Shown: piece after piece, positions 23,984 to 30,502 of the stretch
Layout: every line of letters starts with the position of its first letter
How positions within the stretch are numbered: position 1 is the stretch's first letter
Origin: Fonticula alba ATCC 38817
Taxonomy: Eukaryota > Protista > Nucleariida
Length of the DNA stretch: 40,350 nt
Assembly (NCBI GenBank): GCA_000388065.2
Contig: KB932204.1
Strand: one strand, 5' to 3'
Made by a program: the position numbers and the translations under genes
The notes under the pieces: generated by a model
Seen by the model: the letters and a program-made list of their open reading frames with translations, nothing else
What the model was told of the DNA's origin: nothing
The model's database searches: none

Positions 23984-24532
23984 GATCGAAGGAGAAGGCC
24001 ACGGGGGAAGGGGGAGAAGGATCGAGGGAGAGGGGGAGGGAGGGAAGAAAGCAGCAGGCGAAGCGGGACAGGGGGAGGGGGGGGAAACGGGTTGTCCAGC
24101 TCCCCTGGCCCCCCCCCGGGGGGAACATCAGCGGGGCAAACTATGAATGGGTGTTATTTTGATTCCGGCTGAGCATGTGATCGGCCGAGCTCGGTGCGCC
24201 ACCAAGAATCAGATCGCCGGAAGGATGACAGAAAAATACCCCTACGTATATAGGCATATATTTTTCGATGCAGACCAATGCCGAAGACCCAATGTCACTT
24301 TTGCCAAGAAACAAGATCCCCCTCCCCCNNNNNNNNNNNNNNNNNNNNNNNNNNNNNNNNNNNNNNNNNNNNNNNNNNNNNNNNNNNNNNNNNNNNNNNN
24401 NNNNNNNNNNNNNNNNNNNNNNNNNNNNNNNNNNNNNNCCCTCGCCGCCGCCCCCCCCCCCCCCCCCGCCCCCGCTCATCCCCCGGTACCGGCCGCAATC
24501 TCTCTTTCTCCTGGAGCTCGGTTCCCACGACA

Positions 24533-25748
24533 ATGGATCCCAGATCTGGCGCGTCGCCGCTCTTCGGCATGACCGCAGTCGGCCCCCCGGCTGATGTTGA
24601 TCTTTTCCCTTCGGTTCGCCTTTCCCTCCCGCTCCTCGAACATCCTACTTGCCCTCCCCCCCCCCCTCCTTTGTTTGTCCTGTTCCGCCTCTTTCCTTCT
24701 CCTTCCCTCTCCCTGTCCTCGCGCTCTGTTCTCATTCTAATGTGCACCTGCTGGTCAGATGCCTTCGGAATCCTCCTGGGCCGACTTCGAGCAGAAGGTC
24801 CTCGAGGCTACGGCTTCCTTTTCCTCGATGGCCGAGGCCTTTGGCGACGCGCCCTCACCAGCTGCCGGTTCCAGCTCCTCAACGACCGCGGCCCCGGCGC
24901 CATTGGCTGGGGCCGAGCCGACCCCGCCCGTTGGTTCTGCCCTTTCTCCCTGCTCCCCCTCTTCCAAGCGCGAGCGTCCCCGGGAGGATGGCGAAGAGGA
25001 GGCCTCCTCACCGCCGCCCAAGCGCCCGGCCACCGATGCCGAGGATTCCGCAGCAGCCTTTGTCGGCTTCCGCACGGCCGGCTCAGGCGCTGCCATCCCG
25101 CTCCAGGCAAAGTCGCTTGCCGCCGCGGAAAAACTCCTCGGCGAGGTTGAGCAGTCCACGGCATCGATGTTGTCGCAAACGCGGCCGGCCCAAGAGCAGG
25201 AGGATGTCGCGGCCAAGGTGCCTGACACGCTTGCCGAAAGTGACCCCGGCTTCCAGGGCTTCAAAACTGCCGGCAGTGGCAAATCGATTGCCATCTCCGA
25301 GGCATCGATGTTGAAGGCACGCGGAATTGTCCGCGACGTGGAGAAGGATCTGGCTGTGGCTGCCCCCTCGGGCGAGGGGACAGCGGGGACTCCGCCCCCG
25401 GGGCCCGGCCCCATGGCCCCGGAGGCGCCGGCGGAATTTGTGGGGTTCCGGCTGGCCGGGACCGGTGGCACGGTTCGCCTCTCGGCAGCGGCCCTGGCCC
25501 AGGCTGAGAAGTTGATTGGCTCGATCGCCAGCAGCCCGGAGCTGCCTGTCGGGCCGGGGGAGCCGGCCGCGGGGGCAGCGCCACCGGCGGCGCCTCCCGC
25601 CAGCAGCGCCCCGCGTCGTGTGGGCCTCGGCGCCAGCCGGCCCGCCCTTGGACCACGCTTCCGATCGGGGGCGCCCTCTCAGCGCCCTTTCAAGCCGCCG
25701 ACCCGGGTGCCGGCGCACGCGCCGAGTCAGACCAATGCCGGGGAATGA
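24533..25748 (+). CDS. Short BRC-repeat protein (BRCA2-like RAD51-binding repeats, no DNA-binding domain), ~356 aa
   Basis: Exon 1 is 24533-24613 (donor GTTCGC, CTAAT branch-like motif, CAG acceptor), in phase 0 with exon 2 at 24759-25748. Three ~30-aa repeats: FVGFRTAGSGAAIPLQAKSLAAAEKLLGE (25059), FQGFKTAGSGKSIAISEASMLKARGIVRD (25251) and FVGFRLAGTGGTVRLSAAALAQAEKLIGS (25437). Also has basic NLS-like KRERP..PPPKRP and C-terminal RPFKPP. Confidence 0.8.
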
Positions 25749-26275
25749 CGTTTCCGATGAGGCCCCCCCCCCTGCTGCAGCCAATACATTTATCCTATCG
25801 TATACCAACGGTCCCACGCGGACAGTGGGCACATTTCGCGCACCTTCCAGACCCAAGCGTGGGCAGATGGCCGCGTGTCGGGGCCATGCCTGCCGGGACC
25901 GGGCGCAAAAAAGGCTCCTGTGTGAGTGCCCCGGGGCCGGCCGCCGTACACACCACGCAAGAGGGGGTTTCTCTCCGCGGATCAGCCCGCACCTCGTGCG
26001 CGCTGTTCCCCCGGTCCGGGGCCCGGCTCTTTCCTCGGTGGAGGCCCATGTTCCGGGGGGATGTGTGGCGTGCCATCTTTTTCCTCCGGGGCGGGGGGGG
26101 GTCTTTTTGAGACCCCACTGTGGGGCCGTGGGCCGCGGGTTGAAGGGCACAATCAGTGCTCGTATTCCCCTTCCCCCTTCCTCCCTTCCTCCGCCTCGTT
26201 TTCCTTTCCTCCCCCCTCTCCCTCCCTCCCTCTCTCCTCCCGTGACTGCGCGTCCGTCAGGAACACATAGTGACC

Positions 26276-29200
26276 ATGGTCCCGATCCCGGCCAAGAAGC
26301 GGGCACCGGCTGGCCCATCGGCTGCTGGCAAGAAGCCCACCCCTGGCGGTGCTGGTAAGCAGCTCGCCAAGGCAAAGTCTGGTGCCGCCGCCAGCAAGAA
26401 GTCCGCCAAGGCGGCGCCTGCTCTCTCGGATGAAGACCTTGATGGGTTCGTCCATGTCCCTTCTTTTCCCTGCCGTGCTTCCTTTCACCTGCTTGGTGTT
26501 TTGGTCTCGCCCCGCAAGGAACGCTGATTTGCCTCCTTCTCCCCCCCCCCCCAATAGGTTCCGTCTGCACGATGTGCAGGACGACGCCTATGACTTCGGC
26601 GACGACGATGAGTTTGGTCTCGGTGACGGCGAGGCAGAGTTTGCCTCTGAGCACGACGACCGGCCCTCTAAGAAGGCCGGCAAGAAGAAGGCCGGCAAGC
26701 CGGCCGACGACTCGGATCTCGAGGAGGAGGACGACAATGACGCCGATGATGTCGATGGCTCCCTTGCCAAGGAGTTCATTTCGGCCGCCAAGCGCAAGGG
26801 CAAGGCTGGCTCCTTCGTGTCGATGGGTATGTGGCCATGCGCGGCGTCGTTCTGGGGCCTCATTTTCTTTGTCCCTTTTTTTCCCCCCCATCCTTGCCTG
26901 CCTTGGTGACCAGCCCCCGACTAACCGGCCGCCATCCAACAGGCATCTCCCGGACCACCCTGCGCGCCATTCAGCGCAAGGGCTTCTCCCAGCCGACCCC
27001 CATCCAGCGCAAGACCATTCCCATCATCATGGAGGGCAGCGATGTGGTCGGTATGGCGCGCACCGGTTCCGGTAAGACCGCCGCCTTTGTCATTCCTCTG
27101 ATTGAACGCCTGCGGTCCCACTCGGCCAAGGTGCGTCTTGCCGATTGCCTCTCACAACCCCGAGGGTCTTCCCTCGCGCCCGCTCCCTCCGCCCCCTCCC
27201 CGCCCCTGGCTTCCGTGATCCTGACCCCATCCGCCGTCACTCCGTGCTGGAATGTACTTTCCACCGCCCACTCCCCTCTCCAGGTCGGCGCCCGTGCCAT
27301 CATCCTGAGTCCCTCGCGTGAGTTGGCCCTGCAAACGCACCAGGTGTGCCGGGATCTGGGCCGCTTTACGGATCTGCGCACGGCCATGTTCATTGGTGGT
27401 GAGAGTCTGGATGACCAGTTCACCGCCATGGCCAACCATCCGGACATCATCATCGCCACCCCCGGTCGTCTGTTGCACGTGCTGGTGGAGATGGACTTGA
27501 AGCTCCTGGCGGTGGAATATGTGGTCTTCGATGAGGCCGATCGGTGCGGCATGGGCTTCTTTTCTTCGGCTTTTTGCCCCTGCTTTTCCTGCTTCTTTTT
27601 TTCCTCGATCTAACGGATTTGCCCTTCCTCCGCCCTCCTCGCGACAGCCTCTTTGAGATGGGTTTCGCCGAGCAGATCAATGAGATTCTCAGCCGCCTCC
27701 CGCCCAATCGCCAGACGCTGCTCTTCTCGGCCACCCTGCCGAAGATGCTGGTGGAGTTCGCGCGTGCCGGCCTCACCGATCCGGTGCTGGTTCGCTTGGA
27801 TTCGGAGACCAAGATCAGCGACGACTTGAAGGTATACATCGATAATGCGGGCCATGTCCCTTCCTGGGGGGCCATGTGGCAACTTTGGTCGGGTCATCTT
27901 TCCCTTGTCCCCTTTTCTTACACACCAAACTAACTTTCCTCCCCTTCCCAGATGTCCTTCATCGGCACTCGCCAGGAGGACAAGTTCTCCCTCGTGCTCT
28001 TCACTCTGCGGCACATCATCCCCGAGAAGCAGGTATCTTTTGCGGATGCTTTGCTTTCTTCCCTTGCCCCCCCCCCCCCTCCCCCGCTCAGCTCTCCTTC
28101 TTTGCCGCCCTGGTCATGCTACTTACCTTATCCCGGCCCCAGCAAACCATTGTATTCGTGCCGACGCGCCACCATTGCGACTACCTGCAGCTTATGCTGC
28201 AGCTTGCCGGGATTGAGTCGCGATCGATCTATGGTCAGCTGGACTCATCCGCGCGGCACATTTCCCTCAGTCGCTTCAAGAAGAAGACTCTTCGAGTGCG
28301 TGTGCCTCTTTTGGGTGGGATTTTTCTCTGTTGGCGGAGCAAAGAAAGAAAGGGAAAGCCTCTCCCACCTCTCGCGTGGCTCTTTCGCCGCCCTTTAACC
28401 CGTGGCTCTGTGATTCTTTCTTTTTTTTTCTCCCCTCCCCCCCCCACCCCCACCCTCTCGTGCATCGGGACGGCCGGATCCGCCGCCCGTGTCATGATAG
28501 ATTCTCATCGTGACGGATGTTGCCTCGCGTGGTTTGGATATCCCCCTGCTGGACAATGTGATCAACTACAACTTCCCCGCTCGGCCGAAGCTCTTCATCC
28601 ATCGTGTGGGTCGTGTTGCGCGTGCTGGACGCTCGGGCAATGCCTACTCGCTGGTGTCCTCCGACGAGCTGCCCTACATGATGGAGCTCCAGCAGTTCCT
28701 CGGCAAGCCGCTGACCGTGGTGCCGACGCAGTACAAGTCCAAGGCCGAGCTGGAGGATTTCGACCAGAAGACACGCGGCGTGTCGGTGCAGTATGGTGTC
28801 GTTCCGCCGAACACCCTGGACTCGGAGAATGAGTGGCTTTCCCGCCAGCTGGAGGACAATGTGGATCTGCACTCCATGAGCAAGGTCATCACCAATGCCC
28901 AGAAGATGTACATCAACACCCGTCCCCAGTGTGACAATCCGGAATGCCATGACCGCGCGAAGGAAGTGCTCGATGCCAAGGCCGGCATTCACCCGCTGTT
29001 CATCAATTCCATTCAGGATGGCGAGGTGGAGCAGGCTTCCATCATGGACCAGATTCGCTCCTTCCGGCCGCAGATCGTACGTTGTGGCCGTCTTTTTCGC
29101 TGTGTGGCGGCGCGCGTGGGCACGCGCGATGTGCATGGGTGGGCGGCATTTTTAGACTCATGCGTCGCCCCCGGGGGGGTATGTTCACTGACATGAGTTG

Positions 29201-30502
29201 TTTCCAATGGCAGACCATCTTTGAGCAGGGCAAGAACGCCCGTGGCGGGCAGCTGCTCATGCAGAAGACTCGCCAGCTTCACTCGAGTGTGCGCTTCACC
29301 AGCGAGCTGATCAAGGAGAAGAAGCAGCTGGCAACGACCCTGCTGTCGAAGCTGCCAGCCGTGGCCAAGAGCGCATCCAAGCGGGACACCCGCTTTGACT
29401 CGGACTCCGAGGGCGAGGATGGCCTGGAGCAGGCGGAGCTCAACTCGCCTGAGGTTCTGAGTGTCTTCAGCAATGTCGTTTCCACCGGTGGCCGGAGCAT
29501 GAGCGGCGCCTTCCGGGACAAGGCCAACTACATTGCCTACCAGCAGCAGGACACCCACACCGAGCGGGGCTATTCTCTGTCGGAGTCCGGGAACTTCGTG
29601 CAGCAGGCCCAGGGCGCGTCCATGGACATGATTGGTGATGACAGCGAGACCATGCGCAATCACAAGGTGCAGATGAAGTGGGACCGCAAGAAGAAGAAGT
29701 TCGTCCGGTCGGACCCTCTTGGAGCCATGTCGGCGGATGGCAAGACCAAGATGATTCGCACGGAGGCCGGAAACCTGATCCCGGCCAACTACAAGGCCGG
29801 TGCGTATGACGAGTGGAAGAAGCGCAACCGAGCCCTGCTGGACCGTACCGACACGTCCAGCGGATCGATCGAGTATGGCCGGAAGTCCGATGGGCGTTGG
29901 GGACTGAAGAAGTGCGCTCCATTTCGGTTCCCTCCTTTCTTGGCTTTGGAGCGTCTGGCGGGGGCGGGGGCGTTGCTGAGGCGAAAGGGAGAAGAGCAGC
30001 AAGGAGAGACAAGACAGACAGGCGCTCAGCTGGGGGGTTTCTGACATCGGAATGCGGCAAACATCCAACCACCCCACCCAGGCGGACTTTCGAGTCGTCG
30101 GAGTTCCAGTCGTCATTCGATGGCGAGGGTGGTGACGAGTCGGGCGGGAGCCAGCCGGCGGCCAAGCGTGCACGCACCGCCGGCGGTGCCGTCCAGGCTG
30201 GCAAGAAGAAGGGCCCGGGCGGTCGTCCCATCAAGAGCGAGGTCAAGTCGGCCGAACAGTTCCGCAAGGCTCAGATTGTGCGTACCACGTAGCCAGGGCA
30301 ATGTGTCTGCGATTGTGTGCTCTCCCTCCCTTTTGAATGTCCACGCGCTGACCGCTTTTCATTTTTCCCGTCCTTTTTTTTTCCGGTGCGTTGTGTGCGC
30401 GCACACCCTCTGCAGACCAAGCACCGCAAGCAGGAGTTCATGGAGTCCCGCCGCCGTATCAACGAGAAGCGCCGTGCTGCCTCTGGCAAGAAGAAGAAGT
30501 GA
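26276..30502 (+). CDS. DDX54: ATP-dependent DEAD-box RNA helicase DDX54/Dbp10, ~940 aa
   Basis: Eleven exons: 26276-26445, 26558-26826, 26943-27130, 27284-27543, 27648-27831, 27952-28032, 28143-28295, 28501-29076, 29214-29872, 30082-30277 and 30416-30502 (2823 nt). Contains the Q-motif [60 protein letters not shown] and the Dbp10 C-terminal [10 protein letters not shown]. Confidence 0.95.

What the first reader, a model, noticed from the sequence alone, without database searches (positions are those of the whole stretch)
24533..25748. Stand-alone 'mini-BRCA2': three BRC repeats plus FKPP, no DNA-binding domain
Seen in sequence: a ~356-aa disordered protein with three spaced repeats F-x-G-F-x-(T/L)-A-G-(S/T)-G...(L/M)xxAxxL/I at 25059-25148, 25251-25340 and 25437-25526, an NLS-like KRERP..PPPKRP, RPFKPP at 25683-25700 and a TGA at 25748. 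The gene is boxed in by the divergent TRAPPC5 ATG (23983) and the DDX54 ATG (26276), and there is no gap downstream, so a helical/OB/tower DBD of several hundred residues cannot fit. Established: BRC repeats (FxxA plus a hydrophobic-acidic second module) bind RAD51; FxPP motifs in BRCA2 bind RAD51/DMC1 filaments; isolated BRC peptides disrupt RAD51 filaments; Drosophila BRCA2 lacks the DBD. Inference: this is either half of a split BRCA2 acting in trans, a DBD-less mediator that docks through a partner (N-terminal SSWADFEQ is loosely like the PALB2-binding WF motif), or a dedicated RAD51 chaperone/anti-recombinase. The repeats also carry a non-canonical TAGSG instead of TASGK.
Basis: partly seen in the sequence, partly recalled or inferred. 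Interest (0 to 1): 0.78.

Follow-up and report, generated by a model that had tools for sequence, protein, structure and literature searches.

The report
Short BRCA2 without a DNA-binding domain
The amoeba Fonticula alba expresses a 356-residue, disordered relative of the DNA-repair protein BRCA2 that keeps three RAD51-binding BRC repeats and a PFKPP motif but lacks the DNA-binding domain, which makes it a likely third lineage, after fruit flies and mosses, with such a stripped-down BRCA2.

Summary
The window is Fonticula alba; the gene is H696_03198 (356 aa, annotated 'hypothetical'). Transcript contigs confirm the intron (24614-24758), run unspliced through the TGA at 25746-25748 and stop by 25800.

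The three repeats are true BRC repeats:
- Repeat 2 alone passes Pfam PF00634.
- The whole protein retrieves 107 proteins from 1.84 billion (best E 6.6e-40), all through the repeat region. All ten that I scanned against Pfam carry PF00634, three of them with helical or OB1 domains as well.
- Each repeat alone hits 43-89 of 132 DBD-bearing BRCA2s and no reversed decoy.

The 'non-canonical TAGSG' is a one-residue-longer loop that diatom BRCA2s also have. RPFKPP matches a recurrent [RK]PFKPP motif of BRCA2s.

There is no DNA-binding domain (DBD) in the gene or in the 40-kb window. No Fonticula DBD protein surfaced in two profile searches, and a published BLASTp survey lists none.

Closest known: noncanonical DBD-less BRCA2 of moss (391 aa, NLS plus four BRC repeats) and Drosophila. 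Verdict: new member of a known kind. It differs in being acidic, with no obvious DNA-binding patch except a short basic tail.

The parts
24329..24438 (.). Assembly gap (110 N) in the promoter/5' region. The frame of the start codon is open through it back to 24278.
   Evidence: The N runs in the window differ in length (89-696), so they look like estimated gap sizes.
24533..24613 (+). Exon 1 coding part (27 residues from the annotated ATG).
   Evidence: An RNA contig covers 24484-24612 and joins to 24758.
24614..24758 (+). GT-AG intron, 145 nt.
   Evidence: Joint 24612>24758 in RNA contigs of X1 and X3.
24759..25748 (+). Exon 2 coding part (residues 28-356 plus TGA).
   Evidence: ORF. RNA contigs cover it without a splice.
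24774..24824 (+). N-terminal predicted helix (residues 33-49, SWADFEQKVLE...), a possible partner-docking element.
   Evidence: AF2 helix 33-49 with block pLDDT 60-64. No homologue found.
24966..25028 (+). NLS-like basic pair KRERPR...PPPKRP (residues 97-117).
   Evidence: Read from the sequence. Not tested with any predictor.
25047..25157 (+). BRC repeat 1 (residues 124-160; FRTA plus LLGE modules).
   Evidence: hits 54 of 132 DBD-bearing BRCA2s, 0 decoys. AF2 hairpin 128-143 plus helix 147-166.
25239..25349 (+). BRC repeat 2 (residues 188-224; FKTA plus IVRD modules).
   Evidence: Pfam PF00634, 24 bits, E 2.6e-5 when scanned alone. Hits 89 of 132 BRCA2s.
25425..25535 (+). BRC repeat 3 (residues 250-286; FRLA plus LIGS, no acidic residue in module 2).
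   Evidence: hits 43 of 132, 0 decoys. AF2 hairpin plus helix.
25683..25706 (+). PhePP-type motif RPFKPPTR inside a basic C-terminal tail (residues 291-356, net +6).
   Evidence: PFxPP occurs in 20 of 300 BRCA2s against 1.8 in shuffles; [RK]PFKPP recurs, for example in Mortierellomycota just before the DBD.
25746..25748 (+). Stop codon TGA, present in transcripts.
   Evidence: contigs from all four runs cross it, and none splices out of the ORF.
25749..25800 (+). 3' UTR, at least 52 nt. No transcript coverage at 25801-25928.
   Evidence: tables 2 and 8.

Best explanation
This is the BRCA2 homologue of Fonticula alba in a 'noncanonical', DBD-less form. It is an intrinsically disordered 356-residue protein, organised as an N-terminal acidic region with one predicted helix, an NLS-like basic pair, three BRC repeats about 63 residues apart, and a basic tail with a PhePP-type PFKPP motif. 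Shown here: the repeats are homologous to the BRC repeats of genuine BRCA2s. The FxxA module is kept in all three repeats and the hydrophobic second module in all three (the acidic residue of that module in two). The gene is transcribed, and the protein ends 16 residues after the PFKPP motif, with no helical, OB or tower domain. Inferred from what is established for BRC4-RAD51 and for PhePP motifs: each BRC repeat binds a RAD51 (and possibly DMC1) monomer by mimicking the recombinase oligomerisation interface, and the PFKPP tail binds and stabilises assembled filaments. Together they would deliver up to three recombinase monomers to resected DNA and nucleate a filament, as moss PpBRCA2 and Drosophila BRCA2 do without a DBD. 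How the protein reaches ssDNA is open. Candidates are the short basic tail, a partner bound by the N-terminal helix, an N-terminal extension hidden by the assembly gap, or RAD51 itself. The most economical evolutionary reading is truncation of an ancestral BRCA2 at the BRC/PhePP-DBD boundary, because in Mortierellomycota the same PFKPP motif sits 58-124 residues before the DBD.
For: Identity and gene model. BRC homology: Pfam PF00634 at 18.9-19.1 bits for the whole protein (cut-off 20.3) and 24 bits for repeat 2 alone. phmmer against 1.84 billion representatives gave 107 hits at E<=1e-3 and 41 at E<=1e-10, all aligned through residues about 64-342, mostly 115-290. All ten hits scanned carry PF00634, and three also carry BRCA-2_helical and/or OB1. 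57 of the hits carry a DBD by jackhmmer. Each repeat alone hits 43-89 of 132 DBD-bearing BRCA2s and no reversed decoy. Modules: FRTA/FKTA/FRLA and LLGE/IVRD/LIGS at BRC4-equivalent positions once a one-residue loop insertion is allowed; diatom BRCA2s have the same insertion. AF2 predicts a beta-hairpin plus helix at each repeat and no folded domain (mean pLDDT 46, pTM 0.19). Transcription, intron and stop. No DBD: the DBD profile A2 against the six-frame window gave a best E of 5, and P0001 is absent from the DBD hits. No Fonticula protein appears among all 75 hits of DBD profile search A2, which covered proteins of 452-1438 aa. The BRCA2 tree of the BLASTp survey in PMC11061109 has no Fonticula entry, whereas its RAD51 tree does. 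PhePP motif. Functions of BRC and PhePP motifs: PMC11436757. Precedent for DBD-less BRCA2 as a working mediator: PMC12412785.
Against: The rest of the Fonticula genome could not be scanned, so 'only BRCA2, no DBD anywhere' rests on proteome-level negatives of limited sensitivity. One search listed only 120 of its 216 hits. The protein is acidic (pI 4.95, N-terminal region net -8), unlike moss PpBRCA2, whose strongly basic N-terminus binds ssDNA, so the moss mechanism cannot simply be transferred. A profile built from the three repeats did not find the BRC peptides in the PDB. Repeats 1 and 3 alone do not reach Pfam. FxPP alone would arise by chance in 22% of shuffles of this proline-rich protein, or in 4% within the last 66 residues. 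No orthologue from a close relative was found, so purifying selection could not be measured. No binding to RAD51 was modelled or measured.
Confidence: 0.6

Rival explanations
1. Gene fission. This is the recombinase-binding half of a split BRCA2, and the DNA/DSS1-binding half (helical plus OB folds) is encoded by a separate gene elsewhere and works in trans.
For: The protein ends right where the DBD begins in fungal BRCA2s, 16 residues after PFKPP. It lacks an obvious DNA-binding region. Another first-stage note reports a 4.66-kb 'RADX/RPA70-like multi-OB-fold' gene on another piece of this genome (s1-066717), which I could not inspect.
Against: No Fonticula protein appeared among the DBD-profile hits (one search listed all 75 of its hits; one search listed the top 120 of 216). 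The BLASTp survey of the Fonticula proteome found no BRCA2. No split BRCA2 came up in the papers I read here. The other note likens its gene to RADX/RPA70, not to BRCA2.
Confidence: 0.17
2. A dedicated RAD51 chaperone or anti-recombinase. With BRC repeats and no DNA targeting, the protein mainly holds RAD51 as monomers (sequestration, nuclear import) or limits filament formation, rather than loading RAD51 on ssDNA.
For: BRC repeats bind and disrupt recombinase filaments (PMC11436757). The protein is acidic, with no basic ssDNA-binding N-terminus of the kind found in moss PpBRCA2. It has an NLS-like element.
Against: It retains a PhePP-type motif, and in BRCA2 such motifs stabilise filaments against BRC-mediated disruption. 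Both studied DBD-less BRCA2s (Drosophila, moss) promote recombination. If no other BRCA2 exists, a mediator is still needed.
Confidence: 0.13
3. An expressed relic: a decaying remnant of BRCA2 left after loss of the DBD, with no retained function.
For: No orthologue is available to show purifying selection. Repeat 3 has lost the acidic residue of module 2. Repeats 1 and 3 fall below Pfam detection when scanned alone.
Against: The ORF is intact across the spliced intron and is transcribed. The three repeats are only 38-51% identical overall, yet they keep F-x-G-F-x-x-A-G-x-G and the hydrophobic module while the linkers have diverged. The PFKPP motif is retained.
Confidence: 0.06
4. Assembly or annotation artefact: a longer BRCA2 has been truncated by misassembly or by a wrong gene model.
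For: There is an N gap 95 nt upstream of the ATG, with the frame open through it. Only one assembly carries the gene.
Against: In BRCA2 the DBD lies C-terminal to the BRC repeats, and the 3' side is gap-free. Independent RNA contigs reproduce the stop and end by 25800, and the next gene's transcript starts at about 26161. The gap appears to be size-estimated at 110 nt, too small to hide a DBD of the roughly 800-residue kind aligned.
Confidence: 0.04

Closest known systems
Physcomitrium patens PpBRCA2 and other moss noncanonical BRCA2s (PMC12412785)
   Same: Small (391 aa against 356 aa), wholly disordered, with an NLS followed by a cluster of BRC repeats (four against three) that keep FxxA and the dihydrophobic module. 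No helical/OB/tower DBD. Missed by ordinary BLAST surveys.
   Different: The moss protein has a strongly basic N-terminal region that binds ssDNA (Kd 10-20 nM), and its BRC repeats are packed at the C-terminus. The Fonticula protein is acidic (pI 4.95), its repeats are spaced about 63 residues apart, and it ends in a basic tail with a PFKPP motif. I found no mention of such a motif for PpBRCA2 in the sections I read. The losses are independent (plants versus Holomycota).
Drosophila melanogaster BRCA2 (DBD-less; described in PMC12412785)
   Same: BRC repeats without a canonical DBD. It acts in mitotic and meiotic repair and recruits RAD51.
   Different: From my own knowledge, not checked here: it has about 971 aa and three BRC repeats, so it is nearly three times longer. 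It is a metazoan lineage and not detectably similar outside the repeats.
Canonical BRCA2 (human BRCA2, Ustilago Brh2, Mortierellomycota and diatom BRCA2s)
   Same: BRC repeats of the same family, best matched by the diatoms Cylindrotheca closterium and C. fusiformis (E 6.6e-40 and 8.2e-32), which share the same +1 'TAGSG' loop. A [RK]PFKPP PhePP-type motif C-terminal to the repeats, as in Dissophora and Mortierella.
   Different: No helical domain, OB1-3 or tower, and therefore no DSS1 site. No second (exon-27-type) PhePP/TR2 region. No detectable PALB2-binding motif.
Other proteins reported to carry FxxA/BRC-like or FxPP motifs (RAD51AP1 and FIGNL1, named for FxPP in PMC11436757; RECQL5, from my own knowledge)
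   Same: Short linear motifs that bind RAD51 or DMC1.
   Different: As far as I know, those carry single degenerate motifs inside enzymes or other scaffolds. Here there are three full two-module BRC repeats that retrieve BRCA2s only.

Membership tests
BRCA2 family (canonical) | One or more BRC repeats (Pfam PF00634) with FxxA and a hydrophobic second module | tested here: met
   Repeat 2 alone scores 24 bits against a cut-off of 20.3; the whole protein scores 18.9-19.1, just under it. Reciprocal phmmer retrieves BRCA2s down to E 6.6e-40. Each repeat alone hits 43-89 of 132 BRCA2s and 0 decoys.
BRCA2 family (canonical) | C-terminal DBD: helical domain, OB1, OB2 with tower, OB3 (PF09169, PF09103, PF09121, PF09104) | tested here: not met
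   No Pfam hit. The protein is absent from the DBD jackhmmer and hmmsearch hits. The DBD profile against the six-frame window gives a best E of 5. Transcripts stop at 25746-25748.
BRCA2 family (canonical) | PhePP (FxPP) recombinase-filament-binding motif outside the BRC repeats | tested here: inconclusive
   RPFKPPTR is present and matches the recurrent [RK]PFKPP of BRCA2s (PFxPP in 20 of 300 against 1.8 in shuffles). However, FxPP occurs by chance in 22% of shuffles of this protein, and no binding was tested.
BRCA2 family (canonical) | Nuclear localisation signal | not tested
   KRERPR...PPPKRP at residues 97-117 was read from the sequence only.
BRCA2 family (canonical) | N-terminal PALB2-binding helix (vertebrate feature) | not testable with these tools
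   AF2 predicts a helix at residues 33-49 containing W34 and F37. There is no sequence match to any BRCA2 N-terminus. PMC11061109 reports PALB2 only in mammals.
Noncanonical (DBD-less) BRCA2 class of Drosophila and mosses | BRC repeats present and no folded DBD in the same polypeptide | tested here: met
   (mean pLDDT 46, no domain).
Noncanonical (DBD-less) BRCA2 class of Drosophila and mosses | It is the organism's only BRCA2 homologue (no canonical copy elsewhere in the genome) | tested here: inconclusive
   No Fonticula hit among all 75 hits (452-1438 aa) or among the 120 listed of the 216 hits. The published BLASTp survey found none. The genome itself could not be scanned, and the multi-OB lead s1-066717 was not checked.
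Noncanonical (DBD-less) BRCA2 class of Drosophila and mosses | ssDNA binding through a basic disordered region (shown for moss) | not testable with these tools
   Charge map: N-terminal region net -8, whole protein net -9, only the 66-residue tail is net +6. A basic proline/arginine-rich extension is possible if translation starts upstream of the gap.
Noncanonical (DBD-less) BRCA2 class of Drosophila and mosses | Binds RAD51 and promotes recombination | not testable with these tools
   No multimer modelling was available. Fonticula has a RAD51-family protein, XP_009494877.1, in the RAD51 tree of PMC11061109.

The most novel reading that the evidence does not exclude
Fonticula runs homologous recombination with a BRCA2 that has no DNA-binding capacity of its own. 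It has no canonical DBD and, unlike moss PpBRCA2, no basic disordered region (pI about 5). DNA targeting would then be supplied entirely in trans, by a partner docked on the N-terminal helix, by a separately encoded multi-OB protein (a natural BRCA2 gene fission), or by RAD51 itself. That would contradict the recent proposal that DNA binding is a conserved property of all BRCA2 homologues.
Probability: 0.2. Interest if true: 0.75.

Novelty: new member of a known kind. Interest (0 to 1): 0.55.

Why it matters
The papers read here describe DBD-less BRCA2 only in Drosophila and, since 2025, in mosses. The moss paper proposed two classes of BRCA2 and argued that DNA binding, rather than the DBD, is the conserved feature.

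A third, independent case in a lineage that, from general knowledge, sits near the base of the fungal side of the opisthokonts would show that DBD loss recurs. At 356 residues it would also be the smallest natural 'BRC repeats plus PhePP' BRCA2 among those I compared: moss PpBRCA2 has 391 residues, and Drosophila BRCA2 about 971 (a figure from my own knowledge, not checked here).

Because the protein is acidic, it is a natural test of whether a BRCA2 can work without binding DNA itself. It also corrects the record: the protein is annotated as 'hypothetical', and a published survey of Fanconi/HR genes lists no BRCA2 for Fonticula.

Tried and rejected
- A profile of the three repeats against PDB sequences gave no BRC peptide or BRCA2 chain at E<=10. 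The best hits were unrelated (ISP3, G-gamma). The likely cause is that the one-residue loop insertion is penalised by a three-sequence profile. I record this as a failed reverse test; the 1.84-billion-protein search outweighs it.
- The whole protein against the PDB gave nothing.
- Pfam on repeats 1 and 3 alone gave no hit.
- The word-indexed search in the 196-623 aa range found only the protein itself, so no similar-length relative shares its words.
- Local phmmer with the C-terminal tail and with the N-terminal 123 residues against about 300 BRCA2s gave nothing significant. The tail motif was judged by motif enrichment instead.
- The strict test 'FxPP between the last BRC repeat and the DBD' was met by only 5 of 57 hits, so the position of the motif is not universal.
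- The second DBD profile search listed 120 of its 216 hits. It is therefore uninformative about weak Fonticula hits.
- The scan's notes contain nothing under 'BRCA2' or 'RAD51' elsewhere in the genome.
- Loose-end contigs at 25396 and 26027 in runs X2 and X4 do not map anywhere in the window. The helicase gene shows similar loose ends. I treated them as contigs of other transcripts that share short GC-rich words, not as alternative splicing. This was not resolved.
- The short hits (P0034, P0060, P0066, P0068, P0072, P0080) might have been other mini-BRCA2s. The three whose contigs I looked up (P0034, P0080 and the 540-aa P0047) sit on contigs of 3.9-4.7 kb of unknown origin, so they could be fragments. 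I did not use any of them as evidence.
Full report
**What is there.** The window comes from Fonticula alba. The ORF's product is 100% identical to NCBI H696_03198, an unnamed 356-aa 'hypothetical protein' on scaffold KB932204.1. The CDS is 24533-24613 plus 24759-25748, on the + strand, and every coordinate in the finding checks out. The neighbours are a divergent TRAPP-family gene (275 aa) and, downstream on the same strand, a 953-aa DEAD/Helicase_C/DBP10CT helicase of the DDX54/DBP10 type, whose ATG is at 26276.

The protein is rich in Ala, Pro, Ser and Gly, and it is acidic (pI 4.95). AlphaFold2 gives it no fold: mean pLDDT is 46 and pTM 0.19. The only local elements are one N-terminal helix (residues 33-49) and a beta-hairpin followed by a helix at each of the three repeats. 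From my own knowledge, not checked here, that is the shape BRC4 adopts on RAD51.

**Is the gene model real?** Four public runs from 2012 (two samples, one study) hold the stretch as contigs. These contigs carry eight GT-AG splices in the helicase gene, so they are RNA. For the gene in question they show the following:
- The annotated 145-nt intron (24614-24758) is spliced out in two runs.
- Coverage is continuous and unspliced from 24758 to 25772-25800 in all four runs.
- There is no coverage at 25801-25928.
- The helicase contigs begin at 26161-26165.

The TGA at 25746-25748 is therefore present in transcripts. No splice leaves the ORF, and about 360 bp of intergenic DNA is all that lies between the two transcription units. 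Contigs cannot exclude rare isoforms.

The start codon's frame stays open through it back to 24278. The N runs in the window vary in length, so the gaps look size-estimated. This one is far too small to hide a DBD, and in BRCA2 the DBD lies C-terminal to the repeats anyway. The gap could, however, hide a short basic proline/arginine-rich N-terminal extension.

**Are the repeats BRC repeats?** They are.
- F-x-G-F-x-x-A-G-x-G occurs three times, at residues 128, 192 and 254. Even one such match appears in only 14 of 200,000 shuffles.
- The repeats are 38-51% identical to each other, and the linkers between them are unrelated.
- Pfam's BRCA2 repeat model scores 18.9-19.1 bits on the whole protein, just under the 20.3 cut-off. 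It scores 24 bits (E 2.6e-5) on repeat 2 scanned alone. Repeats 1 and 3 alone give no hit.
- The decisive test is reciprocal. phmmer with the whole protein against 1.84 billion representatives returned 107 proteins at E<=1e-3 and 41 at E<=1e-10. All matched through the repeat region, with up to 16 matched stretches per protein, and most are 1000-3900 aa long.
- All ten hits scanned against Pfam carry PF00634 (down to E 1.9e-120), and three also carry BRCA-2_helical and/or OB1. 57 of the hits carry a DBD by jackhmmer.
- The two top hits that carry a name are from the diatoms Cylindrotheca closterium and C. fusiformis.
- Each Fonticula repeat alone hits 54, 89 and 43 of 132 DBD-bearing BRCA2s at E<1e-3, and none of the reversed decoys.

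One reverse test failed. A profile of the three repeats did not find the BRC peptides in the PDB.

**The 'non-canonical TAGSG'.** Relative to the usual BRC spacing, the Fonticula repeats have one extra residue in the hairpin loop. Once that is allowed for, FRTA/FKTA/FRLA align with FxxA, and LLGE/IVRD/LIGS align with the LFDE module of BRC4. The same +1 spacing is found in BRCA2s that have canonical DBDs: 18 repeats in P0002, 15 in P0004 and 8 in P0005, with sequences such as FRTAGSG and FQTAGSGK. Among the 40 proteins tabulated, each used only one spacing class. The loop is therefore a natural variant of BRC repeats and not a departure from the family.

**The FKPP motif.** FxPP on its own is weak evidence in this proline-rich protein. 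It arises in 22% of shuffles, or in 4% when only the last 66 residues are counted. The specific form [RK]PFKPP recurs in several of them. In Dissophora and Mortierella alpina it sits 58-124 residues before the DBD.

PhePP motifs bind RAD51 and DMC1 and protect their filaments from BRC-mediated disruption (PMC11436757). The Fonticula protein ends 16 residues after this motif, which is where a DBD would begin. It looks like a BRCA2 truncated at that boundary.

**Is there a DBD anywhere?** Not in this gene, and not in the 40-kb window: a profile of 28 DBDs against the six-frame translation gave a best E of 5. Beyond the window I could only ask proteome-level questions.
- A DBD profile search of the 5.8-billion-protein collection (candidates of 452-1438 aa) returned 75 hits from plants, insects, fungi, Cavenderia, Plasmodiophora, Histomonas and diatoms. 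None is labelled Fonticula.
- A second search reaching 640-2037 aa returned 216 hits, but only 120 were listed. None of those is Fonticula.
- A published BLASTp survey of the Fonticula proteome has no Fonticula entry in its BRCA2 tree, although Capsaspora and Salpingoeca are there and Fonticula appears in its RAD51 tree (PMC11061109).

These results point to absence but do not prove it. Another first-stage note reports a 4.66-kb 'RADX/RPA70-like multi-OB-fold' gene on another piece of this genome. I could not read it. It is the obvious candidate to examine for a trans-acting DNA-binding half.

**Mechanism.** The best-supported reading (confidence 0.6) is a noncanonical, DBD-less BRCA2 that acts as the RAD51 mediator. 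On this reading, the three BRC repeats each hold a recombinase monomer by mimicking the oligomerisation interface. The PFKPP tail engages and stabilises the nascent filament, and the NLS-like pair brings the complex into the nucleus. The homology, the motif content, the transcription and the lack of a DBD are shown. The binding and the mediator role are inferred from BRC4-RAD51 and PhePP structures and from the two studied DBD-less BRCA2s.

The rivals are:
- gene fission with a separate DBD gene (0.17);
- a RAD51 chaperone or anti-recombinase (0.13);
- an expressed relic (0.06);
- an assembly or annotation artefact (0.04).

**Comparison with what is known.** The closest known protein is moss PpBRCA2. 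It has 391 aa, is disordered, carries an NLS and four BRC repeats, and has no DBD. It is essential for RAD51 foci and for recombination, and it binds ssDNA through a strongly basic N-terminus (PMC12412785). That paper names Drosophila and mosses as the only known noncanonical BRCA2s.

The Fonticula protein fits that class in architecture but differs in three ways:
- It is acidic: the N-terminal region is net -8, and only the 66-residue tail is net +6.
- Its repeats are spaced about 63 residues apart rather than packed together.
- It keeps a PhePP-type motif.

It fails the canonical-BRCA2 membership test on the DBD. Whether it meets the 'only BRCA2 in the genome' criterion of the noncanonical class is still unresolved.

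**Verdict.** This is a new member of a known kind, and it is currently unannotated. Interest is moderate to high for recombination biology. The main reason is that an acidic, 356-residue BRCA2 made of BRC repeats plus a PhePP motif tests the claim that all BRCA2s bind DNA themselves.

Noticed in passing
window 24329-24438, with flanks 24278-24532: A 110-N assembly gap lies in the shared promoter region between the TRAPP gene and this gene. The start codon's frame is open through the gap back to an ATG at 24278, and the stretch after the gap would read as a basic proline/arginine-rich peptide. An RNA contig reaches at least 24484.
   Followed up: partly
proteins P0002-P0040: In each of the 40 proteins tabulated, the BRC repeats use a single loop-spacing class: either all canonical, or all one residue longer (for example 18 of 18 matched repeats in Cylindrotheca closterium). 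This suggests concerted evolution or co-adaptation with the cognate RAD51.
   Followed up: partly
proteins P0010, P0015, P0020, P0048, P0054, P0096, P0110: A longer conserved block, PKGFRPFKPP, recurs in several long BRCA2s. In P0020, P0054 and P0096 it sits about 1,000-1,340 residues upstream of the DBD start, so this PhePP-type motif is not always adjacent to the DBD. The organisms were not identified.
   Followed up: no
window 25743: The RNA contig of run X2 reads A instead of G, 31 letters from its end. That would change the second-last codon from Glu to Lys. It may be a strain difference or an assembly error.
   Followed up: no
window 25396 and 26027: Low-depth contigs in runs X2 and X4 (the same sample) match only from 25396 onward or only up to 26027, and then continue for 255 letters that are not in this window. 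They are probably contigs of other transcripts that share short GC-rich words, but this was not resolved.
   Followed up: partly
another piece of the same genome (note s1-066717): A first-stage note reports a 4.66-kb 'RADX/RPA70-like multi-OB-fold' gene. It is a candidate for a DNA-binding partner, or for a split-off BRCA2 DBD. I could not read it from this window.
   Followed up: no
window 26276-30000, + strand: The downstream DBP10/DDX54-type helicase gene has at least eight short GT-AG introns (104-205 nt), confirmed by RNA contigs. One further joint, 27087>27440, has TG..AT ends, appears in one run only, and is probably an artefact.
   Followed up: no
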